Virus record (IMG/VR): IMGVR_UViG_3300044712_000810
Location: 124,001-188,000 of that record
Direction: 5' to 3' (one strand)
DNA: 64,000 nt
Notes under the pieces: generated by a model
Database searches by the model: none
Seen by the model: the letters and a program-made list of their open reading frames with translations, nothing else
What the model was told of the DNA's origin: nothing
Made by a program: the position numbers and the translations under genes
Part shown: in pieces, positions 12,439 to 63,689 of the stretch
Layout of the letters: each line of letters opens with the position of its first letter
How positions within the stretch are numbered: position 1 is the stretch's first letter

Positions 12439-13371
12439 TTACATAATAATTTCAATTAATTCAATTGATTCTGTTGTTATAGTTTGATTTGCTTTACCAA
12501 CAACCTTTCCACAGAAACAAGTTTTAATATTGACAATATCAACTGGCATAGCAATACCATCCATACCAGATACTAACATTGTACCTTTTTTGACAGGACC
12601 ATCAACTAAACATTTAACTTTACCAACTCTTGCAATTGCTGGTCCATCAATATCATTATTCATAAGATATGCTGGTGCCTCAGATACAACTCCGAGAACA
12701 CGTGTTGAACATATTTCATTTGACATTTCGCAATCAAATCGATCATCTTCAGAAACTAAAACAACAGTTCCAATAGGTAAGTCTTTTTGTTTGCAAGTAT
12801 ATCTTTCGGCTAAGTCGGCATAACGCGCTTTAGCTGAAATTGCATTGATTTCATTTGCTGAGAAATTACCATCAGCATCACGTCTAACAATTTTATTTGC
12901 GATATTATCTGGTGTAGCATCAACAAGAACATTCAAGTTTGAACTTTGTAAATCTGTAAATGTACATGTACCAGTAGCATCACCAGTCAATGTTAAAATT
13001 GGATCAGGTTTATTTAAAATCTTAGTCCAATCAACACTAGTAATATCAGCATTATCGTGAACGTGTGCATCAGGATCAATAGTTAAATTTAATGTAGCAT
13101 TACCTAAATCTGTAAATGTACATGTGCCGGTAGCACCGCCAACGACAGTTAATGTTGGATCTGGTTTATTTTCAATGTCTTCCCATGATCCAGATGTTTT
13201 ACGCCATTCGGCATGACTATCTGTATTATTATAACAGAAATAAAGTTTACGCCCAGTTTGGATAGATTGATCCACCCATAATTGTCCGACAATAAAACCT
13301 TTACTGCTATCGTCGGTAGCTAATGGCGGTCTATCTGCATAATGTATATGTGGAAAATAGAAATCAGCCAT
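12439..13371 (-). CDS. Tail fibre-like protein with C-terminal peptidase-G2-like chaperone domain
   Basis: W..I.NKPDP repeats; ARYADLAERY...GVVSEAPAYLMN...VGKVKC. Confidence 0.7.
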   Translation of the reverse strand: MADFYFPHIHYADRPPLATDDSSKGFIVGQLWVDQSIQTGRKLYFCYNNTDSHAEWRKTSGSWEDIENKPDPTLTVVGGATGTCTFTDLGNATLNLTIDPDAHVHDNADITSVDWTKILNKPDPILTLTGDATGTCTFTDLQSSNLNVLVDATPDNIANKIVRRDADGNFSANEINAISAKARYADLAERYTCKQKDLPIGTVVLVSEDDRFDCEMSNEICSTRVLGVVSEAPAYLMNNDIDGPAIARVGKVKCLVDGPVKKGTMLVSGMDGIAMPVDIVNIKTCFCGKVVGKANQTITTESIELIEIIM

Positions 13372-24053: not shown

Positions 24054-25862
24054 TTATACAGCTACATTGTACATAACTGTGATATTATCACCGGCTTCGA
24101 TGATACCATCAATTCCCATTGATGCCCATGTAAGTCTATTAGGTGTTGAACCATCCATTTGATAGTCAATACCATAGAATTGGTTAGGAGCATTCTTAAT
24201 AAGAAGAACAACTTGTGATGCAGTTTTTGGTACATTTGCAAGTTGTACATATTTGTTTGTAATATTACTTGCACTAAGAGTAAATGTTTCAACAACATCA
24301 GAATTAGCAGTAGCATTAGTAATAGCAGTTTGCACCCAACTCATTGTTGTTGCACTGCTTGGAGTTGTTGGATCTGCTAAACCTGTAATCTCATAATGGG
24401 TTGCACCATTATATGTATTCCAATTAGATGTAAGCGGTCCAAGAACAACAGAATCGCCCACAAGTTGTGTACCATTACCAGTATTTACACTGAGTACACC
24501 ATCAGTAATTGAAAGACCATCACCTGCAACACCAGAACCAAGACCAATAGCACCAGCAGTAAATACTAAACCACCATTGGCATCAAGGTTGACAGAGATG
24601 TCATTAGATGCAACGACAAGACCTTTAGTTGTATCAACAATCTGTGATGCGTTAACAGATACAGCATCAGCGGTAACTGTAATACCATCGCCAGCACCAA
24701 CAGCCAATGGACCATTGCCGCCAATAAGACCAGCACCAGCAACGGATGGATCGATCTTAACATCGGTTACGGCTCCAGAAGCGATTTCAGTTGAAGTAAT
24801 ACCACCAGCAGATACTTTAAGACCAGCACCACTAAGTGATAATGTTCCACCATCAAGGTCGATTGTAACATTATCTGCTACAATTTCAAGACCGTTACCA
24901 GTATTTACTGATAATGCTGCGCCAGCACCACCACTAAGACCAGCACCAGCAACAGATGCACTAAGTTCAACGCCAGTAATACCAGCTGAAGAAACTTTAA
25001 CACCAGAACCTGTTACTGTAAGTGTTGATCCATCGGCAAGCACTGTAATACTATTTGGGTCAACTTGGATACCGTTACCAGCACCAATATCAATAATATT
25101 ACCATTTTTAGTTAAACCAGCACCAGCAATAATCTGACCAGCACCTGAGAATTGTTCAAATGCTAATTCTGTTGTGTCGATAGTAATAGGATCATCAGTA
25201 ATAAGAACCCAACCAGAGTCATGGTTAATATTACCTTCAGTTACGAATGTGAATGCACCAGCTGTAACTTCAGTTAATGGAGTTCCATCAAAATCAGCTG
25301 CACGAGTAAGAACAGCAGCAGTCGATCCATCACCAGCAACTGACACAACATAAATACCATTTTCAGTGGCATTTGTTTGATCTTTTACTAATACACGGTC
25401 ATTGACTTTAAGTGCAACAGAATCAATTACTAATGCACCATTAGCAGTCATTGTAATTGTTTTACCGGCCAATTCATATGTACCAGCAAGAGTACCAGTT
25501 GTTGTAACTCTAACTGCTGGATGTAAATTAAGACCTTGTGCAACTGTATCTACATATAATTTGTTAGCTGCATCAGTATCAGCAATTGGTGAACCAACAG
25601 ATGTTAATCTATTACCACCCATTGATTGATTACCAGTGTATGGTCTAGATCCATCAGTTTTAATGTAAGATGTTGCTAATTTACTGTCATCAATGTTGCC
25701 AGCAAGCATTGAGTTGGTAATACCACCTGATGTAACATCAAGACCATTATTAGTTCTAATAATGGCACCAGTAGGATTAACTTTAACTTGCAATTCTTTA
25801 CTAGCATTAACTTCTAATGACTGACTATCCTTTTTAATCCATTTACCTTCTACAAGGGCCAT
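24054..25862 (-). CDS. Gly/Ala-rich virion structural (head/tail fibre-like) protein
   Basis: RVLVKDQTNATENGIYVV...LTRAADFD motif; many AGAGL/AGDGI repeats. Confidence 0.75.
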   Translation of the reverse strand: MALVEGKWIKKDSQSLEVNASKELQVKVNPTGAIIRTNNGLDVTSGGITNSMLAGNIDDSKLATSYIKTDGSRPYTGNQSMGGNRLTSVGSPIADTDAANKLYVDTVAQGLNLHPAVRVTTTGTLAGTYELAGKTITMTANGALVIDSVALKVNDRVLVKDQTNATENGIYVVSVAGDGSTAAVLTRAADFDGTPLTEVTAGAFTFVTEGNINHDSGWVLITDDPITIDTTELAFEQFSGAGQIIAGAGLTKNGNIIDIGAGNGIQVDPNSITVLADGSTLTVTGSGVKVSSAGITGVELSASVAGAGLSGGAGAALSVNTGNGLEIVADNVTIDLDGGTLSLSGAGLKVSAGGITSTEIASGAVTDVKIDPSVAGAGLIGGNGPLAVGAGDGITVTADAVSVNASQIVDTTKGLVVASNDISVNLDANGGLVFTAGAIGLGSGVAGDGLSITDGVLSVNTGNGTQLVGDSVVLGPLTSNWNTYNGATHYEITGLADPTTPSSATTMSWVQTAITNATANSDVVETFTLSASNITNKYVQLANVPKTASQVVLLIKNAPNQFYGIDYQMDGSTPNRLTWASMGIDGIIEAGDNITVMYNVAV

Positions 25863-26870: not shown

Positions 26871-27491
26871 TTATTGTTTAGAATATAATACATAAATAAC
26901 ATCACCAGTTTGTAAAACTTGTTCTAAGTTATATCCATCCCAACGTAATTTACGATTGTCATCAAGATCAATTGTATAATCAACATCAAGAAGTTGTGTA
27001 GTTCCTCCTGGTATTGCCACTAAAAATTTCATCCGACTAAATGGCACATAATCTAAGTATATCATTTTACTGGTAACCATTTCATTGGTAAGAGTATAAA
27101 TTCTTACTTCAATATTATCACCAGTGTTTCCACCAGTTGGATGATTAGCTAAGTGATCCTGAAACTGTGTATAAAATGTATTTAAGTCTTCAGCACGAAT
27201 AGGTGAACCCTTACCGTAATAAGTAATAGTGACAGGAGTGTTAGATGCTGATGCATGAAAAAATACTTCACAATTTTTATAATTAACGTAAAACTGACCT
27301 TGTTGTGGAGGATAGTTATTTACTCTTGACATATTATTGACAATAGGTGCAGGCGATACTGAACCATCATCTGGTCTTTCTTTTAAATCGATTTTAAATG
27401 GTGAAGAACTCGATACTGTTAATGTTTCCGATATTTGAATAGGATCCCAAGTACCATCTGGTTTGATTCTTAATGGTTGTACAGGTAACAT
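26871..27491 (-). CDS. Virion structural protein
   Basis: C-terminal YTLTNEMVTSKMIYL..LDVDYTI..LRWDGY resembles the C-terminus of 24054-25862. Confidence 0.65.
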   Translation of the reverse strand: MLPVQPLRIKPDGTWDPIQISETLTVSSSSPFKIDLKERPDDGSVSPAPIVNNMSRVNNYPPQQGQFYVNYKNCEVFFHASASNTPVTITYYGKGSPIRAEDLNTFYTQFQDHLANHPTGGNTGDNIEVRIYTLTNEMVTSKMIYLDYVPFSRMKFLVAIPGGTTQLLDVDYTIDLDDNRKLRWDGYNLEQVLQTGDVIYVLYSKQ

Positions 27492-34001: not shown

Positions 34002-35198
34002 TTATAATATACTATTACGAACCATATCAGCTATTGGGCCTCTTGAGTTCTTACCTTTAAGTACTATATGTCCGTATGTTGGTTGACCTTTAAATGCGCG
34101 AACAGTCCAGTTAAGACCGTTATTACTTTCATTAAGTATTGGCGCATCTATTTGTTCAACGTCACCGAGACATACTACACGAACATTTTCACCCATACGT
34201 GATAATATAACTTTCATTTCTTGTCTAGAGAAGTTCTGACATTCGTCAACAATTACAAATGCATTGTCAATGTTCATACCACGAATATAGTTTAATGGTA
34301 AGAACTCAAAAAACTTTTTATTGAATTCTAAATCAGGTGCTTTTGGATCATGAAATAGTTTATTTGCAGGACGAAGATCATGCAGTTTAAGAACTAAATC
34401 ATGAATTGCACGTGCATATGGTTCAACTTTTTCATCAACATTACCAGGTAAGAAACCAAGTTTTTCACTACCAACATCAATGTGATGTTTTAATATAAAT
34501 ATTTTTTTGAATTTTTTCTTTTCGAGAACCCAATATAATGCGGTTGCTAATGCAATAAAAGTTTTACCATAACCTGCACTTGATTGAATACTTACTAAAT
34601 CAAGTTTTTCATTTAATAACAATTCCATTGCTGCGTTCTGATATGGTGTTTTTGGTTTTACAGTCCATATTGCATTTTCATAATCTATTGCTTTTTCTTT
34701 ACTACTATCCCAGTACTTTAATTTACCATCCACCCAATAGAAACAATTATTAATATATGTTTCTGTATTTATATCAATGAATCCAGTATATAACTGTGAT
34801 TCCGATTTATATGGATGACTATCCTTAAAGTCTTGTGTTTCAATACCAAGTTTAATGGCCTTAAACTTTAAAATGCGATCATTGGTTACGAATATGAATG
34901 GTTCGCCAAGATCTTTATTCTCTTGTAAAAATGAGACCATATCATTCAGTATTTTATTATCTTTCTTACTTGTTGACTTATAGTCTATGACTATGATTTC
35001 GTTTTGAAACTTAATTAGTTCGTCTGTAACCTCTTTAATTATATGAGAAATGCGTGGGTTTTTCTTTAATCCATCGAGTTCTTCGATTGTTTCAGCAGAC
35101 AAATAAATGTCATTCTCTGAACCGTTTCTAAGAATTTCAATAGATTTAGGATTATCAATAAGTACGCTTGTGTCAACACAGTAACTTTTTTTAGACAT
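34002..35198 (-). CDS. phoH: PIN-domain + PhoH ATPase
   Basis: YCVDTSVLID (PIN); Walker A SSAGYGKT; YIRGMNIDNAFVIVDECQN; GDVEQID. Confidence 0.92.
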   Translation of the reverse strand: MSKKSYCVDTSVLIDNPKSIEILRNGSENDIYLSAETIEELDGLKKNPRISHIIKEVTDELIKFQNEIIVIDYKSTSKKDNKILNDMVSFLQENKDLGEPFIFVTNDRILKFKAIKLGIETQDFKDSHPYKSESQLYTGFIDINTETYINNCFYWVDGKLKYWDSSKEKAIDYENAIWTVKPKTPYQNAAMELLLNEKLDLVSIQSSAGYGKTFIALATALYWVLEKKKFKKIFILKHHIDVGSEKLGFLPGNVDEKVEPYARAIHDLVLKLHDLRPANKLFHDPKAPDLEFNKKFFEFLPLNYIRGMNIDNAFVIVDECQNFSRQEMKVILSRMGENVRVVCLGDVEQIDAPILNESNNGLNWTVRAFKGQPTYGHIVLKGKNSRGPIADMVRNSIL

Positions 35199-42313: not shown

Positions 42314-42387
42314 ATATAATGTTATATTTTAATAATTTGGTTATTTATATAGAAATAGTCAATTAAAACAGTCCAAGGAGGACGTTA

Positions 42388-42567: not shown

Positions 42568-42942
42568 GCCAAATTTAAACCTGGTCAAAAAGTAAGAATT
42601 AATCTTGGTGAAGATGGATCTTTTGTTGCAACCATTGATGGTGTAGCAATAAACAAAGATCGTATATTCTATTGCGTATCTGCCGGTGGCATACGATTAT
42701 ATACAATTGAAGAAAAAGTCATTGAAGATCTTTATTTTGGTGACAATAATAAAATGATAAGTCAGATCTTCGAGCACATTGCATTTGATTGGACATTTGA
42801 CGATGTTCCCCGTATAATGGGTAAAGAAAATATTGATATTGCCCAACGCTTATATGAATTTCAAGATATTATGACAGTTCGTGAGTTAACAGAAGAAGAA
42901 CAACATGAACTTAATAGATTATATTTGGAATACGCTTGTTAA
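42550..42942 (+). CDS. Hypothetical protein
   Basis: SH3-like N-terminus KFKPGQKVRI; helical C-terminus. Confidence 0.65.
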   Translation: MPITINAKFKPGQKVRINLGEDGSFVATIDGVAINKDRIFYCVSAGGIRLYTIEEKVIEDLYFGDNNKMISQIFEHIAFDWTFDDVPRIMGKENIDIAQRLYEFQDIMTVRELTEEEQHELNRLYLEYAC

Positions 42943-43270
42943 TGATTGGTCATTTTTTGTAATATATTTTATAGTAAGTATAATTGCAAGAATTATAGGA
43001 TCATTTGTATTTGAATTTAACACATCATTATATAATTTGCGTAAATTTTTAATGAATATTAAATGTATCATCAATCCACAATTTAAAGAAATGGTTGATT
43101 TAGTTGAAACTATTCTTAAATTTATACGTAATTATGAATATCATGATGATAATGATAAAAGGTCAATACATTATAAAGTCCGACAAATACGATATGATTT
43201 ACTAGCATATCGAGAATATACTGAAGAAGATAAATTATTTCTTCAGAAACTACTACTGGAGTTGCTATGA
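42905..43270 (+). CDS. Membrane protein ending LQKLLLELL
   Basis: TM segment + shared C-terminal motif. Confidence 0.6.
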   Translation: MNLIDYIWNTLVNDWSFFVIYFIVSIIARIIGSFVFEFNTSLYNLRKFLMNIKCIINPQFKEMVDLVETILKFIRNYEYHDDNDKRSIHYKVRQIRYDLLAYREYTEEDKLFLQKLLLELL

Positions 43271-43473
43271 AAAAAATCAAAAGACTTAATAGTAATGCAA
43301 ATAGAAAAGAATTATCTTCAATTTTAGATTTATTTAATATCTCTATTGTTAGATATATGACGATCGATGATCTTCGTGAATTACGTAGACTTGATCATGT
43401 TGTAAATAAATTTAAATTTGTATCGTATATAAATGTAATAGCAGGACAAAAACTTCTTACGAGATGTTTATGA
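43267..43473 (+). CDS. Small protein, QKL-tail family
   Basis: ATGA coupling; ends GQKLLTRCL. Confidence 0.6.
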   Translation: MKKIKRLNSNANRKELSSILDLFNISIVRYMTIDDLRELRRLDHVVNKFKFVSYINVIAGQKLLTRCL

Positions 43474-43667
43474 CAATATTCTTTAATCCTGAAGATGATA
43501 AAGAAATATATTCACAAGTTGTTGGATTGTTATATCCAATGTTATATTATCGTGATCATATGACGGATGAAGATTCTCAAATGTGTTATGATTTAGCTGC
43601 TCATCGTTGGTTACAAACTGAAGAAGATTTGTTAACCGCCCAAAAGTTGGTTATAAAGTATATATGA
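43464..43667 (+). CDS. Small protein, QKL-tail family
   Basis: Ends AQKLVIKYI. Confidence 0.6.
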   Translation: MFMTIFFNPEDDKEIYSQVVGLLYPMLYYRDHMTDEDSQMCYDLAAHRWLQTEEDLLTAQKLVIKYI

Positions 43668-43834
43668 CTAGACGAGAACAATTTCGGGCACTTATATTTG
43701 AAATAGAGAAAATAAAATCAACATTGTCTACTGAAGATCAAATTTGGTTTAATCGATTTCGGTGGACAAGACGCCATCGACTTCTCAATTCACATTTAGT
43801 TAAACTCCAAAAATTACTTATAAAGTATATATGA
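43664..43834 (+). CDS. 56-aa protein, QKL-tail family (not in ORF track)
   Basis: MTRREQFRAL...LQKLLIKYI; ATGA overlaps at both ends. Confidence 0.65.
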   Translation: MTRREQFRALIFEIEKIKSTLSTEDQIWFNRFRWTRRHRLLNSHLVKLQKLLIKYI

Positions 43835-44025
43835 CAAACCGAGAACAGCTTCGAGTATTAAGAGATGAATTATATAAGATATATAAACAAATGGATGATA
43901 AAGATAAAAATACTTTTGATGATCTTGATCGGTTATTTCCATATATATGGTTAACTGGTCAACTTCCTAAAGTTAGAAAAGAACATATAATCAAAGCTCA
44001 AAAAATACTTATAAAGCATATTTAG
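43831..44025 (+). CDS. Small protein, QKL-tail family
   Basis: MTNREQLRVL...AQKILIKHI. Confidence 0.65.
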   Translation: MTNREQLRVLRDELYKIYKQMDDKDKNTFDDLDRLFPYIWLTGQLPKVRKEHIIKAQKILIKHI

Positions 44026-44380
44026 TTAGTATTTCATCAACTTTGTTAATATCTTTAATATTAATTTCAAGAAGCGCAATGTTGTTATTAAGACAATAAG
44101 CGCGCTTAATTTCATCACGCATTTTAGTAGTTTCATGAACTCGTTTAGCCTTTGCATATTTGTTAACAGGTTTAAAATGGTGTTGTCCTTGAAATTCGAT
44201 AAGTAGATTCTTTTCTGGAATATAGAAATCGAATCTTAATGGATTACCATTTTCACTTAATAAATCTGGAAATGTTTTCTCTTTAGTATATTCAATATTA
44301 TTCAATTCAAGAAAACATCCGACTGCAAATTCGCCTTTACTAGCACGTTTACCGTTTAAGAAATATCGTTTCTTACGCAT
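44009..44380 (-). CDS. PD-(D/E)XK (DUF559/Vsr-like) nuclease
   Basis: LRFDFYIPEKNLLIEFQGQHHF...D..K...C..NNIALLEI. Confidence 0.8.
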   Translation of the reverse strand: MRKKRYFLNGKRASKGEFAVGCFLELNNIEYTKEKTFPDLLSENGNPLRFDFYIPEKNLLIEFQGQHHFKPVNKYAKAKRVHETTKMRDEIKRAYCLNNNIALLEINIKDINKVDEILTKYAL

Positions 44381-44399
44381 TGTTACTCCTGGAGGATTA

Positions 44400-44648
44400 A
44401 TGACACAATATGATATATTGGTTGGTCATTGTCAAGACATATATAAACTATATATAATTCATTGTAAACATTTACAAAAGTTAAGTAAGAATCCAGATAA
44501 TTTCATTCCACCCGATTATATACTTAAATATTTATTACGGGCATTATTACTCGTAAGTAATAAAACATTATCAGATTATACCCAAAGAATTAATTTCGCA
44601 ATTAAAACTAAGATAGAACTTCAAAAAATAGTGATACCAGAGTTATGA
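44400..44648 (+). CDS. Small protein ending ELQKIVIPEL
   Basis: GGAGG RBS. Confidence 0.6.
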   Translation: MTQYDILVGHCQDIYKLYIIHCKHLQKLSKNPDNFIPPDYILKYLLRALLLVSNKTLSDYTQRINFAIKTKIELQKIVIPEL

Positions 44649-48227: not shown

Positions 48228-49721
48228 ATGCATGTGAATGTGTTCGGTGAAACTCTTTTTGATATCTACAAACTCAAAAGTCCGAGCAGATATTATGCAC
48301 CATCAGATTTTAAATGCGCATTAAGAGAAAAATTAGCTGATCATGTTCCAGTCTTTGATGATTGTAATGATTTGAATTGGATGAAAAGAACTGGATATGA
48401 ATCATTTAATAGAAGAGCAGATCTTATATATGATCAGTATGATAACTTTATCACGTATGATCCTGCAAAACCATTAACTGTATTTGCATTTGAATTTTAT
48501 AATAATGGTGATTTTAATATATTTAGTGAGATTACAGATATCCTTGATTTTGATATAGATCTTAATGATATTAATGATGATGATTTCGAATTTGATAAAT
48601 TTAAACCATTCATATTCAGCGCAGTTATTGGTTGGGTATATGATGGTTTCATGAAACGTAATGTGTCATTCAATATTTCTGAATTGTCAAAATATATGCC
48701 AGTGTATGATCCTATTGCTATGTTATTCGATATGCATGAAATATGGAAAGATTATAATCAAACTGAAATTTGTAGTTATTTAGAGATTGATGAAGATAAT
48801 AAAAAATATCATGAAATTTGGAAAGAATATACGGAAATCAAAGAATGTAGATCAAAATCATACAAGGAACGCGGCGTTTGTAGCGCTTGTCATTTATATA
48901 ACTGTGATGAACATCCTTATTACTATATGGAAAGATGTGAAAATAAAAACACAGACGAGTGCATCGACTGTGATGATATTGATAACTGTATATATCGCAA
49001 AGATAAATTTCTTGATGATTTTTATAATAAATATGCTAAGAATAATGAGGATGATATGTCCGAATCAAAATCCAAAAATGGTCTTTGTGAAATATGTGGA
49101 AGTGAATTGAGTAGTAAAGTTTCTACATTCACAGACATCAATAATAATACACATGCAACATGCATAACATTTTGTGAACCATGTTCGTCGGCTTCCACAA
49201 AAGCCAAAGAAACAATAAACATTAAATGCAACAAATGTGGCGGAGATAGAGTTGCGACAAGGGACAACAAAGGTCGTCGATCACTATACTGTCACAATTG
49301 CGATAATGACGAATACTTCAACAAACACAACAACACTAACACTCAGGAGGAAGTCACCATGGCCGGTAAGATCAAAGAAGCAGCTACCAAGAACGTTGCC
49401 GATCTGAAGGACGCTGCAATCGACGTGGCCCAGATCACCGCTGCAAAGCAGGTCAACAAGCTGATCACTGTCGCTCTCAAGAAGAAGGCTCCAATCTTCC
49501 TCAAGTCCTACATGGACGAACCCATGATCCAGGCTGCTCTCGGCGTCGTCGTGACCGCCATGATCGAGCAGTACAAGCCCAACGAGATGACCGCGCGTCT
49601 GGCTTACGCCAGCAAGCAAGCCATGTTTCTGGAACTTGGCGAAACCCTCAACATCGACGGCATCATCAACGAAGCTCTTGCCGCCTTCACCGGCGAAAAG
49701 ATCAACATCGAAAAGAGCTAA
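48228..49721 (+). CDS. Composite Cys-rich ORF with internal in-frame starts (49056, 49359)
   Basis: Multiple CxxC pairs; RBS+ATG at 49056 and 49359; abrupt codon-usage shift at 49359. Confidence 0.65.
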   Translation: MHVNVFGETLFDIYKLKSPSRYYAPSDFKCALREKLADHVPVFDDCNDLNWMKRTGYESFNRRADLIYDQYDNFITYDPAKPLTVFAFEFYNNGDFNIFSEITDILDFDIDLNDINDDDFEFDKFKPFIFSAVIGWVYDGFMKRNVSFNISELSKYMPVYDPIAMLFDMHEIWKDYNQTEICSYLEIDEDNKKYHEIWKEYTEIKECRSKSYKERGVCSACHLYNCDEHPYYYMERCENKNTDECIDCDDIDNCIYRKDKFLDDFYNKYAKNNEDDMSESKSKNGLCEICGSELSSKVSTFTDINNNTHATCITFCEPCSSASTKAKETINIKCNKCGGDRVATRDNKGRRSLYCHNCDNDEYFNKHNNTNTQEEVTMAGKIKEAATKNVADLKDAAIDVAQITAAKQVNKLITVALKKKAPIFLKSYMDEPMIQAALGVVVTAMIEQYKPNEMTARLAYASKQAMFLELGETLNIDGIINEALAAFTGEKINIEKS

Positions 49722-54128: not shown

Positions 54129-54411
54129 AAAAGATCGTAAAGTTGATGCATTTAGAGAATGGACTTATATATCAATTAAGTTCAATCAATATGTTACTGT
54201 AACTGCAACGATATATAAAAATCATAGAAGAAAAGATACTCTACAAGTAGCTTGTAGAAATACAAAAAAGAAACATAAAGAAAATATGCCTTATACACCA
54301 TATAAAGAAATTAAAAAACCATTGAAGTTTTTTATGACAGTAGTATTTAGAAACTTAACATCAAGACAACAGAAGTTAGTGACTAAAGCACTATTGGAGT
54401 ATGTCATATGA
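54109..54411 (+). CDS. Hypothetical protein
   Basis: Coupled ORF. Confidence 0.55.
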   Translation: MINPLPRKDRKVDAFREWTYISIKFNQYVTVTATIYKNHRRKDTLQVACRNTKKKHKENMPYTPYKEIKKPLKFFMTVVFRNLTSRQQKLVTKALLEYVI

Positions 54412-54701
54412 TTGTAGGAACTTTTCCTGGTAAAATGCCTATTAATTACATTGAAGTAATTGCAGAAGATGGAACTATATATGCAATCAATAAAGATAAT
54501 GGCGCAATATACATTAAGAAATATGTAATTGATGTTGATAATGATAGTAATCGTATGCGTGGGCGTCCCGCAGTGGATGGACCAGGAAGATTTGAATACA
54601 AACAAGTATTACCAAATAAATTTTTGAATACTGTATTGCCGAATATTAAGGATGAAGATCTTAAACTTGAAGTTACTAAGATAATCGTGAGGAATATATA
54701 G
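54408..54701 (+). CDS. Small protein ending DEDLKLEVTKIIVRNI
   Basis: C-terminus matches the 58-63.6 kb array motif. Confidence 0.6.
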   Translation: MIVGTFPGKMPINYIEVIAEDGTIYAINKDNGAIYIKKYVIDVDNDSNRMRGRPAVDGPGRFEYKQVLPNKFLNTVLPNIKDEDLKLEVTKIIVRNI

Positions 54702-58085: not shown

Positions 58086-58166
58086 AATGCCTCCTTAAAG
58101 TTACTAATAATATATTTCTATATGATATATTTAAATATACAATAAAAAATGGCCTTTCGGCCATTA

Positions 58167-58547
58167 CTAAACTTTTTCAATAACCAATTTCATTATTTTA
58201 TGTTTTAGCTCTTCGCACCACACCGACTTTATAATAGTATAATAAGTAGCATATAATCCACCAGGTAAATCTTTTAAGAAATATGTAACTAATTTTTTAT
58301 TCATATAGTTAATAACAACGATTGCATGATCATCGTCATTATCCAAATCTTTCATTGGATCATACATTTCATAATTTTCAACAGCAATACCTAATTTATG
58401 TAATATATGAGATTTATAAAACATATCATTAATATCATGTTCTTTATTATATTCTCGTAAATCTGTATAATTTAAATCAGGATCATCTTCACGATATACT
58501 TTTAAATATGTCATAACAAGTTTATAATCATCTTTTGTTGGTTTCAC
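58167..58547 (-). CDS. Array-family protein (..ELKHKIMKLVIEKV)
   Basis: Shared C-terminal motif. Confidence 0.65.
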   Translation of the reverse strand: MKPTKDDYKLVMTYLKVYREDDPDLNYTDLREYNKEHDINDMFYKSHILHKLGIAVENYEMYDPMKDLDNDDDHAIVVINYMNKKLVTYFLKDLPGGLYATYYTIIKSVWCEELKHKIMKLVIEKV

Positions 58548-58837
58548 AAGTTCTCCAGTACAAGTTTCTGCATTTTACATTTCATATCATCATCAAAGAA
58601 AGCCATAATAACATGTGTGAAATTTTGATGTAAATCACTTGTTTTATATAATGGGAATAAACCATTCTTATATTTAAATATGATATAATTTCCATCCTTA
58701 CTTGTTGAATAAATGTTTATATTTAATGCGTTATATACCGGTATGCAATGAATTGCCGAAGTATCTAAAAACAATTTAATAAGATCATACATGTCTTTGT
58801 CTTGTTTCATAATAATCCCTAAAAATAACGGCCCCAT
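58544..58837 (-). CDS. Array-family protein (..FDDDMKCKMQKLVLENL)
   Basis: Shared C-terminal motif. Confidence 0.65.
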   Translation of the reverse strand: MGPLFLGIIMKQDKDMYDLIKLFLDTSAIHCIPVYNALNINIYSTSKDGNYIIFKYKNGLFPLYKTSDLHQNFTHVIMAFFDDDMKCKMQKLVLENL

Positions 58838-58852
58838 ATAGGGGCCGAAGAT

Positions 58853-59434
58853 TTAGTTAAGGAGTGCACCCTCAGGTGCATCCAAAATTTCTTTTTTCCA
58901 TTCAGCAATCGCTGCGAGTTCTTCCGCTTTGTCTTCTTCGGAAACGCCTTCTTCGAAGACAGGATCGAGAACAGCAAGAACCATTTTGCGAATGCTTTTT
59001 GGCAGTTGTTTCAGGTATTCAGCCTGAACATCCAGATTGGGAATACTGTTCAAACGAGAAACAATCTCGGTAAGAAGCTCTTCCACTTCGGGATCACGTT
59101 CTTGACCAGGATGATCACAGGCATAAATATTTTCACCAAGATCATCAAGTTTTTCATAGGTGACAGATTTGCAGTTCTCGATATCTTTTTCCGTAACGGT
59201 ACGAATAAGAATGTTATCGAGATAAATCTCATCACCAACTTCAAGAGGATCCATCATCATCATAGGGAACATCGCCATCTCAATCATCATGTCTTGTTCG
59301 GACAGACCACGACCGATGAAATCATTCCTGATATCATCCTGAATCACATCAGGAGTAAAGATGATCTTGTTGCCGACCTGTTCACCATTGCGCTTAAAAA
59401 CAATTTCCTGAGTGTTCTCGAGAATATCGTCCAT
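58853..59434 (-). CDS. Acidic hypothetical protein with host-like codon usage
   Basis: 193-aa ORF; GAGG RBS. Confidence 0.7.
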   Translation of the reverse strand: MDDILENTQEIVFKRNGEQVGNKIIFTPDVIQDDIRNDFIGRGLSEQDMMIEMAMFPMMMMDPLEVGDEIYLDNILIRTVTEKDIENCKSVTYEKLDDLGENIYACDHPGQERDPEVEELLTEIVSRLNSIPNLDVQAEYLKQLPKSIRKMVLAVLDPVFEEGVSEEDKAEELAAIAEWKKEILDAPEGALLN

Positions 59435-59473
59435 AATTCCCTCAAAGAAGAGATAATCCCTTCTGGTTAGAGA

Positions 59474-59695
59474 TTAATCGCGAACCATGGCTTGAATTGC
59501 CATGTATTGAATTGTATGTGTGTGATGAATTGACTCAATCGTGTCTGCCATTAGCCGATGCTTAATGAACTGTGGTCCACCTTGTGGAAGATATCCATGT
59601 TCAAGAAGCTCATCAACTTTCTTTTGAAGTTGATCTGTTAAATCAGCAATATTTGCTGAAGGACCAACTCGAACAACTTTGTATTCGTACATCAT
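59474..59695 (-). CDS. DUF1737-like small protein
   Basis: YKVV...LQKKVDELLEHGYLPQGGP...QAMVR. Confidence 0.65.
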   Translation of the reverse strand: MMYEYKVVRVGPSANIADLTDQLQKKVDELLEHGYLPQGGPQFIKHRLMADTIESIHHTHTIQYMAIQAMVRD

Positions 59696-59859
59696 TCCTC
59701 CATTATTGTTTGTAGAATGAAATCATATCTACAAGTATAAATATTGTAATTATGATTAAACTTCCCCATGCACTCAACAGTAACACTGCAAATCCATCAA
59801 GATGTTTGACCATAATCATTCCTCCATTTTCAATATTTCTATATGAAATGTTTAATAAT

Positions 59860-59881
59860 AAAAAAAAGTCCCATGTGGGAC
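59860..59881 (-). terminator. Terminator closing the 14-gene array operon
   Basis: GTCCC-ATGT-GGGAC with A-run on the + strand. Confidence 0.65.
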
Positions 59882-59882
59882 C

Positions 59883-60152
59883 TTAAAGGTGTTTAATTAA
59901 TATTTTTTGTATTTCTTCTCTCATGCCATAGTCCATAAATTCAAAAATTACATCTTTTAATGTAACACATTCTGTTACATTTTTACGTCTGAACCATATT
60001 TCATAGTCTTTAAATTTAATTGATATAATATGCGTTTTATCACCACGCCATACACATTCTGTTTGTATATAATTTATAAGTTCATCAATTAATACATTTT
60101 TATGATTATTCGATTGCATCAATTCATATAGTTCTAGATCTCCGGGTTTCAT
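59883..60152 (-). CDS. Array-family protein
   Basis: Ends FMDYGMREEIQKILIKHL. Confidence 0.7.
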   Translation of the reverse strand: MKPGDLELYELMQSNNHKNVLIDELINYIQTECVWRGDKTHIISIKFKDYEIWFRRKNVTECVTLKDVIFEFMDYGMREEIQKILIKHL

Positions 60153-60406
60153 AAGTGTTCAATTAATGCTTTAAGCATTTTAAGTTTCATATCCTCATCA
60201 AAGAAAGGATCTATTATTGAATGAAAGTTTGTAGTTGGTACAACTTCATGATCTTTATATCTATAAATCATTCGTTCATTCATTGCATCCCATTCCCATT
60301 TTATATTCAATAAATTATGCCAATCAGGATATTTACTTGATCTTAATCCAAATGCATAATAGAATTGATCTATTATCTTATAATCTTCATCACTAATACG
60401 TGTCAT
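60149..60406 (-). CDS. Array-family protein
   Basis: Ends FFDEDMKLKMLKALIEHL. Confidence 0.7.
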   Translation of the reverse strand: MTRISDEDYKIIDQFYYAFGLRSSKYPDWHNLLNIKWEWDAMNERMIYRYKDHEVVPTTNFHSIIDPFFDEDMKLKMLKALIEHL

Positions 60407-60660
60407 ATATTCTCCACTATAAATTTCTTTAAGTTAAGTTCCATATCATCGTCAAGCATTTCTTTTACTATATTTTTACCATCAAAGTCATCATAATAAA
60501 CTTTAGATCTTAAACCTTTATATTCATATCCAATATATCTTTCCTCAGTGTCTTTATCCATCATTTGATATATATTAATTCCTAAATAATTTAATAACAA
60601 TCTTCTACCATTAGATAATCTAAATGCTATATCAAGTAATTCTTTTTGTTCATCTGTCAT
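60403..60660 (-). CDS. Array-family protein
   Basis: Ends MLDDDMELNLKKFIVENI. Confidence 0.7.
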   Translation of the reverse strand: MTDEQKELLDIAFRLSNGRRLLLNYLGINIYQMMDKDTEERYIGYEYKGLRSKVYYDDFDGKNIVKEMLDDDMELNLKKFIVENI

Positions 60661-60929
60661 AGTTGTTCCAACAAATACTTTTGCATGTTCACCCGAAGAT
60701 CTTCATCCCAGAAATGTCGGAATGCATTGCGTAATCCTTTTTTATATGGAATTCCATTTTCATGTTTATGTAATTGACCTTTATATTCATATAAGTTACC
60801 TTGAATGACTCCCTGGTGAATTATAAAGAAGTATTTAATGCCAATTTTTTTACATACATCTTCAGTCGATTCTAATTTGTCAGAAACTGAAATGTATGTT
60901 CTCATTAGTTGAAAGTCTGAACGAGTCAT
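60657..60929 (-). CDS. Array-family protein
   Basis: Ends FWDEDLRVNMQKYLLEQL. Confidence 0.7.
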   Translation of the reverse strand: MTRSDFQLMRTYISVSDKLESTEDVCKKIGIKYFFIIHQGVIQGNLYEYKGQLHKHENGIPYKKGLRNAFRHFWDEDLRVNMQKYLLEQL

Positions 60930-60937
60930 ATCTCTCC

Positions 60938-61225
60938 TTATATGTTTTGTATTATGTACTTCTGTATTAGAAGTGCCAACTCATCATCAACAAGTTTACA
61001 AATACATGACGCAATATAACTTATATAAAACTCATCATTAAGTCCATTTCTATATTCACGAAGTGTATCAACAAATTTAAATTTATAAGTTTTATTCTTA
61101 TATGTTAATGACCAATAATCTTCTAAATGATCATAATCCAAATCAAATAATGAATTCACGAAAAACTCATCACTGTTTTTATGAACTAAATTGCAATAAG
61201 TATAGACTAGATCATAATGTTTCAT
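60938..61225 (-). CDS. Array-family protein
   Basis: Ends LVDDELALLIQKYIIQNI. Confidence 0.7.
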   Translation of the reverse strand: MKHYDLVYTYCNLVHKNSDEFFVNSLFDLDYDHLEDYWSLTYKNKTYKFKFVDTLREYRNGLNDEFYISYIASCICKLVDDELALLIQKYIIQNI

Positions 61226-61479
61226 ATTAGGTCAAGTACTTCACGTTGGATTTTTATCTTTATGTCATCATCCCAAAAGTATTTAATGACTGCACGTTTA
61301 ATAGTCATAGATCTTTTGACCGATCCTTTCTTGATTTCATCTCTGTGTATGCCGTGTCGTTTATAGTAAAATGTCTTATTCGCAGTATTATATTCAATAC
61401 CAAGATCTTCTAATAATCTGGTATTGTTTCGTTTATATAAGAACGTATTAAGCATTTGACATTCAACAACAGTTAACAC
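61222..61479 (-). CDS. Array-family protein
   Basis: Ends FWDDDIKIKIQREVLDLI. Confidence 0.7.
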   Translation of the reverse strand: MLTVVECQMLNTFLYKRNNTRLLEDLGIEYNTANKTFYYKRHGIHRDEIKKGSVKRSMTIKRAVIKYFWDDDIKIKIQREVLDLI

Positions 61480-61748
61480 TACAACTCCTCCAAAATGATT
61501 CTTTGTATTTTAAGTTCTAAATCAAAATCCATAAGTGTTTCCATATTTTTAAGAAATGCTTTTTGTGAATATGAGAATACTGATTCAATTTCATAATCTT
61601 TATAATTTAATCTATCAGTATATCCTCTAATATCAAGACTATATTCAGCTCTTTCACATTCAATTCCAAGTTTTTCATACAACTCGCCTGTTTGAGTTTT
61701 ACCATGATATAGTATTAATAAATTCTTTTGCATTTCATTTAAACTCAT
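61479..61748 (-). CDS. Array-family protein
   Basis: Ends LMDFDLELKIQRIILEEL. Confidence 0.7.
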   Translation of the reverse strand: MSLNEMQKNLLILYHGKTQTGELYEKLGIECERAEYSLDIRGYTDRLNYKDYEIESVFSYSQKAFLKNMETLMDFDLELKIQRIILEEL

Positions 61749-62038
61749 AAAACCTCCACTAATATTTTTTGTATTGCTATCCGCATATCATCATCCAGTG
61801 CTTGTAATATTAAATCACCCATAAAAAGTATATCTCTTTCTCTAGTAATATTATACAATACATAATGCATATATACATTATCTTTATATTTTACATAAAA
61901 TACTTTTGATTCGTCATTATTATTCCAATCTGTATCATAATCACAATCAAATCCTATATTTGAAAAGAATCCATCCAATTCATTATCTGAATGATATTCA
62001 GCATACATAGTTACAAGTGCAATATCGGCTTCGATCAT
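61745..62038 (-). CDS. Array-family protein
   Basis: Ends ALDDDMRIAIQKILVEVL. Confidence 0.7.
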   Translation of the reverse strand: MIEADIALVTMYAEYHSDNELDGFFSNIGFDCDYDTDWNNNDESKVFYVKYKDNVYMHYVLYNITRERDILFMGDLILQALDDDMRIAIQKILVEVL

Positions 62039-62328
62039 ACTAACTCAATAATATACTTTTGCATTTCAAGTCGCATGTCTTCATCAAACAAAACCTCCAA
62101 AGCAGGATACATGTCACGGTGAAAATCAAAGAATGCTCGTGCATGTGGAATATAAACTCGATGTTTATATTTAATTTGATCACCAATACACACATATTCT
62201 TTATTAAATCTATATTTGTATTTGATTTTAAATCGTTCAAATAATTCACGTCTTGATATTAATCTGTTGTCATATATTAACTCAACAAATATATTTATTA
62301 ATTTACGATCATCTGCATTATCTGTCAT
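62035..62328 (-). CDS. Array-family protein
   Basis: Ends LFDEDMRLEMQKYIIELV. Confidence 0.7.
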   Translation of the reverse strand: MTDNADDRKLINIFVELIYDNRLISRRELFERFKIKYKYRFNKEYVCIGDQIKYKHRVYIPHARAFFDFHRDMYPALEVLFDEDMRLEMQKYIIELV

Positions 62329-62606
62329 ACTCGTTCAACCACATATTTCATCATATTAAGATACATATCATCATCCATAAGTGTTAATATTATATTAGAT
62401 AAAGTTGGTGGATTTTGCATTTCAGTTCCACGTTCAATAACTTTATCATTATACTTGTATACTGTGACTTCACCAAGATCTTCTTCATCATAAACACTTC
62501 GTTTAATTCCTAATGGAATAAATAGCTTTATATTAAAATACCCTGGTCTTTCTTTACTTCTAAAGAAATTCATATATGTAGTTAATAGTTGTTCTCTGTT
62601 TGTCAT
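62325..62606 (-). CDS. Array-family protein
   Basis: Ends LMDDDMYLNMMKYVVERV. Confidence 0.7.
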   Translation of the reverse strand: MTNREQLLTTYMNFFRSKERPGYFNIKLFIPLGIKRSVYDEEDLGEVTVYKYNDKVIERGTEMQNPPTLSNIILTLMDDDMYLNMMKYVVERV

Positions 62607-62842
62607 ATTAACTCCAGTAACAGTTTTTGATACTGAACTAACAAATCAGGATCTTTAAATGCCTTAACAATAGCAGATACATCTTCAATGGTTAGATGTT
62701 TATTAACCATGCGATATTCATAATTGGAATCACGTTTATAAAATCTAACTTTACCAACTTTATATTTATACATATCCATTCTAATATTTAACGCATTAAT
62801 AATCCAATACGACCAACCATCTAAATTTGTTTCAGGAGCCAT
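62603..62842 (-). CDS. Array-family protein
   Basis: Ends FKDPDLLVQYQKLLLELI. Confidence 0.65.
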   Translation of the reverse strand: MAPETNLDGWSYWIINALNIRMDMYKYKVGKVRFYKRDSNYEYRMVNKHLTIEDVSAIVKAFKDPDLLVQYQKLLLELI

Positions 62843-63111
62843 TTGTTGTACCTTATAGTTAGTTGTTCATCATCAAACTTACGTATTAGTATCCATAAGT
62901 TATATAAGTCATTAGGAAATTGTCGTTTAATAACAATCTTACCATAGTGTTTAGTCCATGCATTATCGGATGGGCCGGAATATTTAAATTGATATTTAGT
63001 TACGACTTTTCTATGTAAGTCATACGTATCTACTGATTTGAATTCACTATATGTTATATTTAATTCAAACAAAATTTGTGACATTCGATGAAATGTAATA
63101 TGTTTATTCAT
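62821..63111 (-). CDS. Array-family protein
   Basis: Ends FDDEQLTIRYNKWLLKQI. Confidence 0.65.
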   Translation of the reverse strand: MNKHITFHRMSQILFELNITYSEFKSVDTYDLHRKVVTKYQFKYSGPSDNAWTKHYGKIVIKRQFPNDLYNLWILIRKFDDEQLTIRYNKWLLKQI

Positions 63112-63359
63112 ACAAGTAACAACAATATTTTTTGATATTGAATTTTTAGATCAATATTATCAAATTCATTCACAATAGATTCAATATCTTCTAAACATGT
63201 TACATATTCTTTACGAATTACTTCTTTATTTTTAAATGAAAATTTATATCCATCATCAAAGTTATGATACATATGAGTTTTTATCTTTAACCCATCAAGT
63301 ATCATACGAAACCGTTTGGTTGAATAAAGAATCATTACCGATTTGCCAAGAAGGTTCAT
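63108..63359 (-). CDS. Array-family protein
   Basis: Ends FDNIDLKIQYQKILLLLV. Confidence 0.7.
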   Translation of the reverse strand: MNLLGKSVMILYSTKRFRMILDGLKIKTHMYHNFDDGYKFSFKNKEVIRKEYVTCLEDIESIVNEFDNIDLKIQYQKILLLLV

Positions 63360-63589
63360 ATAAGCTCCAGTAGAAGTCGTTGATATGCGATTGTTAGTTC
63401 TTCATCGTTGATAAATTCAACGATATCGGCAAGTCCATCAATAGTTACTGGGGCAGTACCCATGATACCAATGCGTTTACCTTTATAAAATATAGCAGAA
63501 GTCGGTGTGACTTTATCATTTTCATAAATTGTAGACATTTTGATATTATTATCACGAGTAAATTTAATAAGACAATCAAAAGGATTCAT
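63356..63589 (-). CDS. First gene of the array operon
   Basis: Start reassigned to ATG 63589 (GGAGG RBS, promoter 63615-63625); ends INDEELTIAYQRLLLELI. Confidence 0.7.
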   Translation of the reverse strand: MNPFDCLIKFTRDNNIKMSTIYENDKVTPTSAIFYKGKRIGIMGTAPVTIDGLADIVEFINDEELTIAYQRLLLELI

Positions 63590-63647
63590 TTTATCCTCCT
63601 TAATACACCAAACTATTTCTATATGAAAAGTTATAAAACTAAAAAAT

Positions 63648-63678
63648 GGGCTATACGAGATCTTAGCCCGTATAGCCC
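63648..63678 (-). terminator. Terminator upstream of the array promoter
   Basis: GGGCTATACG/CGTATAGCCC 10-bp stem with A-run. Confidence 0.7.
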
Positions 63679-63689
63679 AATAAAAAAAC

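What the first reader, a model, noticed from the sequence alone, without database searches (positions are those of the whole stretch)
58167..63625. Sixteen small proteins with divergent N-termini and one conserved C-terminal helix (hxDxD(M/L)xxx(I/M/Y)QKhhhExh-COOH)
Seen: 14 genes from one promoter (63615) to one terminator (59860), mostly coupled by ATGA overlaps, plus 2 more at 58167-58837. They are mostly 79-126 aa, have low N-terminal similarity apart from a frequent Y.YK strand, and share a near-invariant terminal ~18 aa. Related tails occur at 54408 and in the 55115-ending ORF. Inference: a library of adaptors in which variable heads recognise different targets (e.g. host defence proteins) while the constant tail docks on one hub, such as a protease, secretion or packaging machine, or a partner.
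Basis: partly seen in the sequence, partly recalled or inferred. Interest (0 to 1): 0.62.

Follow-up and report, generated by a model that had tools for sequence, protein, structure and literature searches.

The report
Shared C-terminal hairpin on phage proteins
A 315-kb soil jumbo phage carries 44 diverged copies of one small, previously unseen protein domain, and the same 30-residue C-terminal helical hairpin also ends about 30 unrelated proteins, which suggests a portable tag for a shared but still unknown partner.

Summary
The 16 genes are intact, mostly ATGA-coupled, and bracketed by a promoter-like motif and terminator hairpins. They belong to a 44-member paralogue family (17 in the window) in a 314,837-bp phage record with terminal repeats. 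No Pfam, PHROG, PDB or fold match was found. Only two foreign relatives appeared among 1.84 billion representatives.

Heads-only HMMs recover about half of the other array's members with no decoys. AlphaFold2 (pLDDT 94) gives one compact α-α-β-β-β-α-α domain whose last helix is the tail.

Genome-wide the idea revives. The same tail sits at the exact C-terminus of about 31 further proteins in at least 10 head groups, with no detectable head similarity. That makes 74 of roughly 530 ORFs. One head is DUF7448, and 119 homologues elsewhere lack the tail. The motif is almost never internal and is absent from 86 T4 early ORFs.

Part of the last four residues reflects an embedded Shine-Dalgarno and start codon for the next gene. 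The conserved Q-K and acidic turn are under protein-level selection.

Best reading: a portable C-terminal α-hairpin giving a shared interaction. The partner is not identified.

The parts
63614..63623 (-). Promoter-like motif TATAGAAATA (extended TTTCATATAGAAATA[TG]T), about 25 nt upstream of the first array gene
   Evidence: There are 61 copies in the genome against about 5 expected. It also precedes primase, topoisomerase II and ATPase genes, so an early/middle class is inferred.
63647..63679 (-). Terminator-like hairpin closing the upstream unit, just before the array promoter
   Evidence: 13-bp stem, T-run
63356..63589 (-). Family member 1 (77 aa from the ATG at 63589). Divergent subfamily with tail Y-Q-R-L-L-L-E-L-I.
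63108..63359 (-). Family member 2 (83 aa)
62821..63111 (-). Family member 3 (96 aa). Its best paralogue is in array 2 (45% identity).
62603..62842 (-). Family member 4 (79 aa)
62325..62606 (-). Family member 5 (93 aa)
62035..62328 (-). Family member 6 (97 aa)
61745..62038 (-). Family member 7 (97 aa)
61479..61748 (-). Family member 8 (89 aa)
61222..61479 (-). Family member 9 (85 aa, GTG start)
60938..61225 (-). Family member 10 (95 aa)
60657..60929 (-). Family member 11 (90 aa), the protein that was modelled. Elements: H3-19, H22-28, E32-38, E41-49, E52-57, H62-73, H76-89.
60403..60660 (-). Family member 12 (85 aa)
60149..60406 (-). Family member 13 (85 aa)
59883..60152 (-). Family member 14 (89 aa), last gene of the 14-gene unit
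59865..59884 (-). Terminator-like hairpin ending the 14-gene unit
58853..59695 (-). Two intervening non-family genes (73 aa and 193 aa) with no family hits
58544..58810 (-). Family member 15 (88 aa from the internal ATG)
58167..58547 (-). Family member 16 (126 aa, GTG start), followed by a terminator-like hairpin at 58165-58148
54408..54701 (+). Family member 17 (97 aa), on the opposite strand
   Evidence: E 6.6e-9
42905..44648 (+). Group E: five short helical proteins (56-121 aa) with a different head and the same C-terminal tail. Coordinates: 42905-43270, 43464-43667, 43664-43834, 43831-44025, 44400-44648.

Best explanation
SHOWN. The 16 genes belong to a 44-copy, old and highly diverged lineage-specific expansion of one small cytoplasmic α+β domain (α-α-β-β-β-α-α, about 85 aa). 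It sits in a 315-kb rhizosphere jumbo phage. The conserved tail is the last helix of a C-terminal helix-turn-helix hairpin (H3, an acidic D-[DE]-[DE] turn, then H4). The same hairpin occurs at the exact C-terminus of about 31 other proteins of this phage, with heads that show no detectable similarity. These heads include an all-β DUF7448 domain, long coiled-coils, Cys-rich domains and short helical proteins. In total this is 74 of roughly 530 ORFs. The hairpin is therefore a portable module, not just a family trait. The last four residues (h-E-x-[ILV]) are additionally shaped by the overlapping Shine-Dalgarno sequence and ATG of the next cistron.

INFERRED. The module gives its carriers one shared interaction. 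Either they dock on a common host or phage partner, or they assemble with each other. The diversified heads, expressed from early/middle-type promoters, supply different specificities such as host take-over or counter-defence targets. The partner is unknown.
For: - Family size and significance. Heads are homologous.
- Single-domain model with pLDDT 94.4, in which the tail is H76-89.
- A tail-only PSSM scores >=5 at 20 non-family C-termini against 0.08 expected from 78,311 internal windows. Iteration gives 70 carriers, or 74 in union with the family.
- hhalign: heads are unrelated (probability at most 2%), and only the last 15-27 residues align, in register with the C-terminus.
- The DUF7448 head scores E 2e-30 (Pfam) and 6e-42 (PHROG), and the tail lies outside the match. 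The 119 foreign DUF7448 homologues have a median tail score of -30 and a maximum of 0.4, against 7.1 for the phage's own copy.
- The DUF7448+tail model is an all-β head plus H121-135 and H138-151.
- The motif is C-terminal in 68 (+2) cases, against about 10 weak internal windows.
- T4 control: 0 of 86 ORFs.
- Synonymous usage at Q(-8) and K(-7) is close to genome-wide, so selection acts on the protein.
- 52 ATGA-coupled genes without the tail lack Q-K, and 30 uncoupled tail genes keep it.
- The tail is kept in diverged foreign arrays with 28-41% identity.
- Paralogues are at most 51% identical, all have open frames (one has an altered end), and the two arrays are interleaved.
- The promoter motif is shared with replication genes.
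- No TM segment or signal peptide.
Against: - No partner was found, and the one complex prediction gave no verdict.
- In the family model the tail helix is packed inside its own domain. Its conserved polar residues could be purely helix-stabilising: Asp N-cap and a K(-7)/E(-3) i,i+4 pair. This is inference.
- Small groups of 2-7 sequences give profile comparison little power, so very remote common ancestry of all tail-bearing groups is not excluded.
- Exclusive C-terminal placement could reflect how the module spreads, by 3'-end recombination at gene junctions, rather than a need for a free C-terminus.
- Only one complete genome exists, with no host and no expression data.
Confidence: 0.45

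Rival explanations
1. Purely structural module. The hairpin is a stable folding nucleus or cap with no common partner. It is shared because all carriers descend from one very old superfamily, or because 3'-end recombination between neighbouring coupled genes spreads it.
For: - The tail is helix 4 of a compact domain.
- The hydrophobic pattern covers two faces of the helix, as expected for a core helix, and Asp N-cap and K/E i,i+4 features are classic helix stabilisers (inference).
- Family heads are homologous.
- Arrays of coupled genes favour unequal crossing-over.
Against: - The tail is appended to a DUF7448 β-domain that is complete and widespread without it (3,208 homologues).
- It occurs on coiled-coil and Cys-rich heads with no profile similarity.
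- Q(-8) and K(-7) are conserved in 50 and 64 of 70 carriers across all groups by protein-level selection. That is more than packing requires.
- It is never internal.
Confidence: 0.3
2. Shared C-terminal turnover or recognition tag. The tail is read by a host protease or chaperone (Clp, Lon or FtsH type), so that many early/middle proteins are removed or handled on one schedule, or so that bound targets are delivered for degradation.
For: - Strict placement at the free C-terminus with a hydrophobic last residue.
- Early/middle-type promoters.
- Soluble cytoplasmic proteins.
- Concept known from ssrA tags and SspB-type adaptor tails (own knowledge).
Against: - Known degrons and adaptor tails are short and unstructured. 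This one is an 18-30-aa predicted helix packed in a domain.
- The terminal I/L/V is largely forced by the NTA-TGA overlap with the next ATG.
- No phage ClpP, Clp AAA+ or PDZ protein was found.
Confidence: 0.1
3. Dual-coding by-product. The tail is conserved because its DNA carries the Shine-Dalgarno sequence and start codon of the next cistron.
For: - The phage uses SD (61% of large ORFs against 3.5% at random positions).
- In the 43 minus-strand family members, codon -4 is CTG/TTG/GTG in 20 of 43, against 5-10% genome-wide.
- Glu at -3 is GAG in 12 of 24 family members and 19 of 37 across all 74 carriers, against 12% genome-wide.
- In the family, the last codon is NTA in 33 of 43, followed by TGA.
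- Glu at -3 occurs in 35 of 62 genes followed by a start, against 2 of 12 operon-terminal genes (p=0.024).
Against: - It explains only the last four residues.
- Q(-8), K(-7) and the acidic turn show free synonymous variation and persist in uncoupled and terminal genes.
- 52 coupled genes, including an 11-gene array, lack the motif.
- The simple ATGA-coupled versus uncoupled codon contrast was not significant.
Confidence: 0.05
4. Recognition sequence for a phage modifying enzyme. The constant tail is a follower or core peptide read by one of the phage's radical-SAM enzymes, as in libraries of RiPP precursors.
For: - A radical-SAM/SPASM gene lies between the two arrays.
- At least six further radical-SAM genes occur elsewhere in the genome.
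- Tens of small paralogues sharing one constant region resemble prochlorosin-type precursor libraries (own knowledge).
Against: - Carriers are predicted to be stably folded domains with the tail in the core.
- There is no RRE-like N-terminal domain in the SPASM enzyme, whose radical-SAM domain starts at residue 31.
- There is no conserved Cys or aromatic residue in the tail.
- Tail genes are scattered over 150 kb.
Confidence: 0.03

Closest known systems
T4 capsid targeting sequence (CTS) on internal proteins and Alt (PMC3012670)
   Same: A short constant terminal peptide is shared by otherwise unrelated phage proteins and directs them to one partner.
   Different: The CTS is N-terminal, about 10 residues long, cleaved off by the prohead protease, and sits on late, packaged proteins. 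Here the element is a C-terminal helical hairpin of about 30 aa, on 74 proteins, with early/middle-type promoters and no known partner.
Poxvirus ankyrin/PRANC (F-box-like) multigene families (PMC9414399, PMC4353913)
   Same: A large DNA virus carries a multigene family in which a short C-terminal helical motif is the constant docking element and the rest varies.
   Different: That is a eukaryotic ubiquitin-ligase hub with ankyrin heads. No F-box or PRANC match was found here, and this is a bacterial virus.
Zinc-ribbon expansion (~35 copies) of Bacillus phage G (PMC7824862)
   Same: A lineage-specific expansion of a small protein in a jumbo phage. The review copies 'unprecedented'.
   Different: Different fold. 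The expansion here is larger (44 copies), and its conserved element is shared with other head types.
SspB-type protease adaptors with a C-terminal ClpX-binding tail (own knowledge)
   Same: A variable substrate-binding body with a constant C-terminal docking peptide.
   Different: That tail is a short flexible peptide after a linker. Here it is a structured helix, and no Clp component is encoded by the phage.
DUF7448 (PF24240) / phrog_2650
   Same: One tail carrier (genome 282551-283009) is a bona fide member (E 2.3e-30 and 6e-42).
   Different: The 119 best homologues elsewhere end differently and lack the hairpin.

Membership tests
Any Pfam-A or PHROG family (44-member family) | Profile match above threshold | tested here: not met
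   Ten members scanned. Best Pfam E 0.021 and best PHROG E 6e-4 on a 33-residue stretch, none above cut-off. The PDB sequence profile gave E 0.58.
Any known fold (44-member family) | Structural match clearly above background | tested here: not met
   Foldseek PDB and BFVD best E 0.087-0.093. ESM Atlas TM <0.5. VIA wide best Z 5.2, below the tool's stated background of 7-8. A missing match does not prove a new fold.
DUF7448 (PF24240), for the protein at genome 282551-283009 | Full-length domain match above the gathering score | tested here: met
   105.5 bits against a cut-off of 27, residues 4-113. The tail lies outside the match.
T4-type capsid targeting sequence | N-terminal position, removal by the prohead protease, late expression | tested here: not met
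   The motif is C-terminal in 68 (+2) cases. The promoter motif is shared with replication genes. Cleavage is not testable here.
F-box / PRANC adaptors | F-box-like profile match at the C-terminus | tested here: not met
   No such Pfam hit in 30 tail carriers scanned.
RiPP precursor library | Short unstructured precursor; maturase with a recognition element next to the precursors; modifiable conserved residues | tested here: not met
   Folded domain with pLDDT 94. The SPASM enzyme has no N-terminal extension for an RRE. No conserved Cys or aromatic residue in the tail. Modification itself is not testable here.
Helix-turn-helix DNA-binding proteins | HTH profile match; basic recognition helix | tested here: not met
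   No HTH family hit. The turn is acidic (D-[DE]-[DE]) and pI is heterogeneous, median 5.9. DNA binding itself was not tested.

The most novel reading that the evidence does not exclude
A phage-wide C-terminal address tag. About 14% of the proteome of a jumbo phage, with at least 10 head types showing no detectable similarity, carries one roughly 30-aa α-hairpin at the free C-terminus. The hairpin routes or docks these proteins to a single host or phage hub, and the 44-copy family acts as a diversified adaptor library. This would be a bacterial-virus counterpart of F-box/PRANC or CTS systems that has not been described.
Probability: 0.3. Interest if true: 0.85.

Novelty: new variant of a known kind. 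Interest (0 to 1): 0.68.

Why it matters
If the hairpin is a docking tag, it defines a single point through which a giant phage coordinates dozens of small early/middle proteins. It is also a simple handle, as a peptide or a fusion, to pull out the partner and to assign function to some 74 orphan genes at once.

Even on the conservative reading, this is the largest tandem expansion of a small protein seen by me in a phage: 44 copies, against the ~35 called unprecedented in PMC7824862. The domain has no fold match and almost no relatives in public data. It is also a clear example of amino-acid conservation partly imposed by overlapping translation signals.

Tried and rejected
- Pfam and PHROG scans of family members gave nothing. 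Scans of other tail groups found only DUF7448.
- Megablast of the array against 50,697 phage records found no match.
With a tighter alignment it found no confirmed relative in IMG/VR or JGI metagenomes. Confirmation by tblastn of one 88-aa sequence is a weak test.
- The word-based protein search returned only self hits.
- The large profile search was used because the claim rests on absence of relatives. It gave 41 own and 2 foreign hits.
- Foldseek PDB and BFVD, ESM Atlas and VIA wide gave no usable match for the family model. Foldseek PDB gave none for the DUF7448+tail model.
- The ESM feature search gave nothing. The PDB sequence profile gave nothing.
- Complex prediction, DUF7448+tail protein against a family member: no answer (0.26 against a mark of 0.32). 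This is not evidence either way.
- Phage-encoded hub candidates ClpP, Clp AAA_2, PDZ_2 and sigma70 region 2 were not found.
- The sigma-70 promoter scan was not enriched over shuffles.
- The terminase is only about 25% identical to T4-like, Flavobacterium-phage and an uncultured 484-kb phage, so no close relative is known.
- Only one run holds the DNA, a rhizosphere metagenome that is probably the source, and no RNA is available.
- The codon contrast between ATGA-coupled and other tail genes was not significant. After separating true operon-terminal genes, only Glu at -3 differed (p=0.024).
- Literature searches found nothing comparable.


Full report
CONTEXT. The window is bases 124001-188000 of a 314,837-bp virus record with direct terminal repeats, rated complete. 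GC content is about 0.26-0.42, and the window holds no tRNA. The large terminase is only about 25% identical to T4-like, Flavobacterium-phage and an uncultured 484-kb phage terminase, and no closer relative was found. The only public run that holds the array is a rhizosphere metagenome, probably the source sample, with no RNA data. The phage uses Shine-Dalgarno sites: 61% of large ORFs have one, against 3.5% of random positions.

THE OBSERVATION. All 16 ORFs are present on the minus strand. Fourteen run from 63589 to 59883, and ten of their 13 junctions are ATGA overlaps. The run is preceded by the motif TATAGAAATA at 63614-63623 and by a terminator-like hairpin of the upstream unit at 63679-63647. 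It is closed by a hairpin at 59884-59865. Two non-family genes follow (59695-58853), then a hairpin at 58847-58829. Then come the last two members (58810-58167) and a hairpin at 58165-58148. An iterated HMM over every ORF of at least 40 aa in the genome finds 44 members (E 1e-7 to 1e-22). Seventeen lie in the window, including 54408-54701 on the plus strand. Twenty-seven lie in a second minus-strand array at genome 197388-205059. The ORF ending at 55115 is not significant.

ARE THE HEADS UNRELATED? No. With the last 24 residues removed, an HMM built from array-2 heads finds 9 of 17 array-1 heads at E<1e-3. The reciprocal search finds 8 of 27. None of 585 decoy ORFs passes in either direction. 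Mean pairwise identity is 17% in the head, 12% in helix 3 and 36% in the tail.

AlphaFold2 with the 43-paralogue alignment gives a confident single domain (pLDDT 94.4, pTM 0.80). Its elements are H3-19, H22-28, E32-38, E41-49, E52-57, H62-73 and H76-89. The frequent Y.YK is in the β-sheet. The acidic D-x-D is the turn between helices 3 and 4, and the conserved tail is helix 4.

The family is old and diverged. The closest pair is 51% identical, and typical best matches are 25-45%. The best paralogue lies in the same array for only 24 of 44. One member (genome 199195-199503) has lost the canonical end and runs on for 19 residues.

IS IT KNOWN? No Pfam, PHROG or PDB-sequence match was found. Foldseek against PDB and BFVD, the ESM Atlas and a Foldseek-independent scan of 48,161 chains give nothing above background. 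The best Z is 5.2, where the tool's typical background best is 7-8. A missing match does not prove a new fold.

The word-based search of 5.8 billion proteins returned only this genome's own proteins. Because the claim rests on absence, the profile search of 1.84 billion representatives was run. It gave 43 hits, of which 41 are own and 2 foreign. The two foreign proteins lie on contigs of 518 and 717 bp from two ENA assemblies. On each contig they are flanked by further family ORFs, joined at 4-nt overlaps. All five ORFs on these contigs match the family HMM but are only 28-41% identical to any member here. Distant relatives of this phage therefore carry their own diversified arrays and keep the tail.

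THE TAIL IS WIDER THAN THE FAMILY. Relaxed HMM hits showed similar C-termini on other ORFs. A PSSM of the last 18 residues scores >=5 at the C-terminus of 20 non-family genes. From 78,311 internal windows, 0.08 would be expected. Iteration gives 70 carriers, and the union with the family gives 74 of roughly 530 non-overlapping ORFs.

Across all 70 carriers the conserved positions are:
- K at -7 in 64, and Q at -8 in 50.
- Hydrophobic residues at -13, -11, -9, -6, -5, -4 and -1.
- E at -3 in 35.
- D/E at -16 to -14.

The 31 extra carriers fall into at least 10 groups:
- long coiled-coil proteins of 105-225 aa (genome 231970-234768);
- Cys-rich proteins of about 95 aa (283010-284672);
- proteins of about 170 aa (296477-297520);
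- short helical proteins of 56-121 aa, inside the window at 42905-44648;
- several others.

Profile-profile comparison finds no similarity between their heads and the family heads (probability at most 2%). On full length it aligns only the last 15-27 residues, in register with the C-terminus. These groups are small, so the power of this test is limited.

THE DECISIVE CASE. The protein at genome 282551-283009 (152 aa) is a DUF7448 domain (Pfam E 2.3e-30, residues 4-113; phrog_2650 E 6e-42). It is followed by about 32 residues that end in the tail. DUF7448 has 3,208 homologues in the large database. The best 119 foreign ones have a median C-terminal tail score of -30 and a maximum of 0.4, against 7.1 for the phage's own copy scored leave-one-out. 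AlphaFold2 with that alignment gives an all-β head (residues 1-116, pLDDT >90). Two helices follow, H121-135 and H138-151, with pLDDT 85-63. This is the same helix-turn-helix hairpin as H3-H4 of the family. The shared unit is thus a portable α-hairpin of about 30 aa, added in this phage lineage to a domain that is complete without it elsewhere.

CONTROLS.
- Position: 68 exact C-terminal hits, plus 2 with one extra residue, against about 10 weak internal windows (scores 8-12) in roughly 80,000.
- Another AT-rich phage rich in small coupled early genes: none of 86 ORFs in T4 bases 1-50000 scores >=0 (maximum -5.2), against 88 of 520 here.
- Coupling: 52 ATGA-coupled genes without the tail show no Q-K. 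Among them is a separate 11-gene array at genome 205676-208258 that has a conserved N-terminus instead. Thirty tail genes that are not ATGA-coupled keep K(-7) in 90% and Q(-8) in 67%.

DUAL CODING. In the 43 minus-strand family members, the codon at -4 is CTG, TTG or GTG in 20, against 5-10% genome-wide. Glu at -3 is GAG in 12 of 24 there, and in 19 of 37 across all carriers, against 12% genome-wide. In the family the last codon is NTA in 33 of 43, followed by TGA. This places GGAG or GGAA five to six bases before the ATG of the next gene. Glu at -3 is present in 35 of 62 carriers that are followed by a start within 12 nt, but in only 2 of 12 operon-terminal carriers (p=0.024). The cruder ATGA versus non-ATGA contrast was not significant. 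By contrast, Q(-8) is CAG in 24% (17% genome-wide) and K(-7) is AAG in 31% (23% genome-wide). These residues are therefore held at the protein level. The overlay explains h-E-x-[ILV] and the fixed distance to the stop, not the rest of the motif.

EXPRESSION CLASS (inferred). TATAGAAATA occurs 61 times against about 5 expected. It sits 7-60 nt upstream of many operons, including those for DNA primase, topoisomerase II large subunit, an RNA-binding protein and an ATPase. It precedes array 1 and occurs inside array 2. The start of array 2 has a near-consensus TTGTCA-N17-TATAAT. This points to early/middle rather than late expression. The carriers have no TM segment or signal peptide, and their pI is heterogeneous.

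MECHANISM.
Shown: one expanded single-domain family; a portable C-terminal hairpin on heads with no detectable similarity; protein-level selection on Q-K and the acidic turn; a translational overlay on the last four residues.
Inferred: the hairpin confers a shared interaction, and the heads diversify specificity.
The structural rival remains serious. The helix is packed in its own domain in the family model. Asp at the helix start and the K(-7)/E(-3) pair are ordinary helix stabilisers, which is my inference from general helix chemistry.

No partner was found. There is no phage ClpP, Clp AAA+, PDZ or sigma70-r2. The single complex prediction gave no verdict and is not used as evidence. A radical-SAM/SPASM gene lies between the arrays, and six more radical-SAM genes lie elsewhere. 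Nothing else links them to the tail.

COMPARISON AND NOVELTY. Conceptually nearest are the N-terminal capsid targeting sequence of T4 internal proteins (PMC3012670) and the C-terminal PRANC/F-box motif of poxvirus ankyrin families (PMC9414399, PMC4353913). Both are constant terminal elements on variable bodies. Membership in either is not met. As an expansion, this one exceeds the ~35-copy zinc-ribbon family of Bacillus phage G that PMC7824862 calls unprecedented. Literature searches found no description of a C-terminal module shared across a phage proteome. I rate it a new variant of a known kind (a constant terminal module plus a lineage-specific expansion), with a 0.3 chance that it is a true address-tag system.

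LIMITS. There is one complete metagenomic genome, an unknown host and no expression or interaction data. 

Noticed in passing
L008:17676-19000 and L012:1-1258 (genome 205676-208258, minus strand): A third ATGA-coupled array of 11 small paralogues (72-97 aa). They share a conserved N-terminus (M-N-x-L-E-[QR]-x-V-x-x-L-L) and an h-K-I C-terminal end, and have no Q-K tail. This is a second, separate expansion next to array 2.
   Followed up: partly
L008:3087-4337 (genome 191087-192337); L012:8961-18941 (genome 215961-225941): At least seven radical-SAM genes in one phage. One, with a SPASM domain, lies between the two tail arrays. Six more lie in a minus-strand cluster, four of them blastp paralogues. 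This is unusual for a phage, and their substrate is unknown.
   Followed up: partly
L008:124-3085 and L008:4883-9328 (genome 188124-191085, 192883-197328): Three paralogous tail-collar fibre proteins (PF07484, phrog_523/17517) and three paralogues of about 490 aa with no family hit sit between the two arrays, on the same strand.
   Followed up: partly
genome-wide; in the window e.g. 63614-63623 (-), 59834-59843 (-), 58113-58122 (-), 42348-42357 (+): The motif TATAGAAATA (extended TTTCATATAGAAATA[TG]T) occurs 61 times against about 5 expected. It lies upstream of replication genes and many small-gene operons. It is a likely phage-specific promoter class that resembles, but differs from, the T4 late TATAAATA.
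   Followed up: partly
window 8333-9871 (-); window 34002-35198 (-); window 48228-49721 (+): A phage-encoded histidine kinase (HisKA + HATPase_c), a PIN-PhoH fusion and a DUF7566 protein.
   Followed up: no
window 4028-5863, 12439-13371, 13383-15305, 15320-16795 (-) and genome 114578, 118021, 213224, 225952: An eight-member paralogue family of large proteins (245-737 aa) with no Pfam hit for the four scanned. There is also a five-member family that includes window 24054-25862 and 26871-27491.
   Followed up: no
L008:11195-11503 (genome 199195-199503, minus strand): One family member has a truncated tail motif followed by a 19-residue basic extension that overlaps the next gene by 23 nt. It is the only member with a broken canonical end.
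   Followed up: no
L012:1255-1485 (genome 208255-208485, minus strand): A 76-aa Cys-rich protein heads the third array. The tail-bearing group C (genome 283010-284672) is also Cys-rich and may bind zinc. Neither has a family hit.
   Followed up: no
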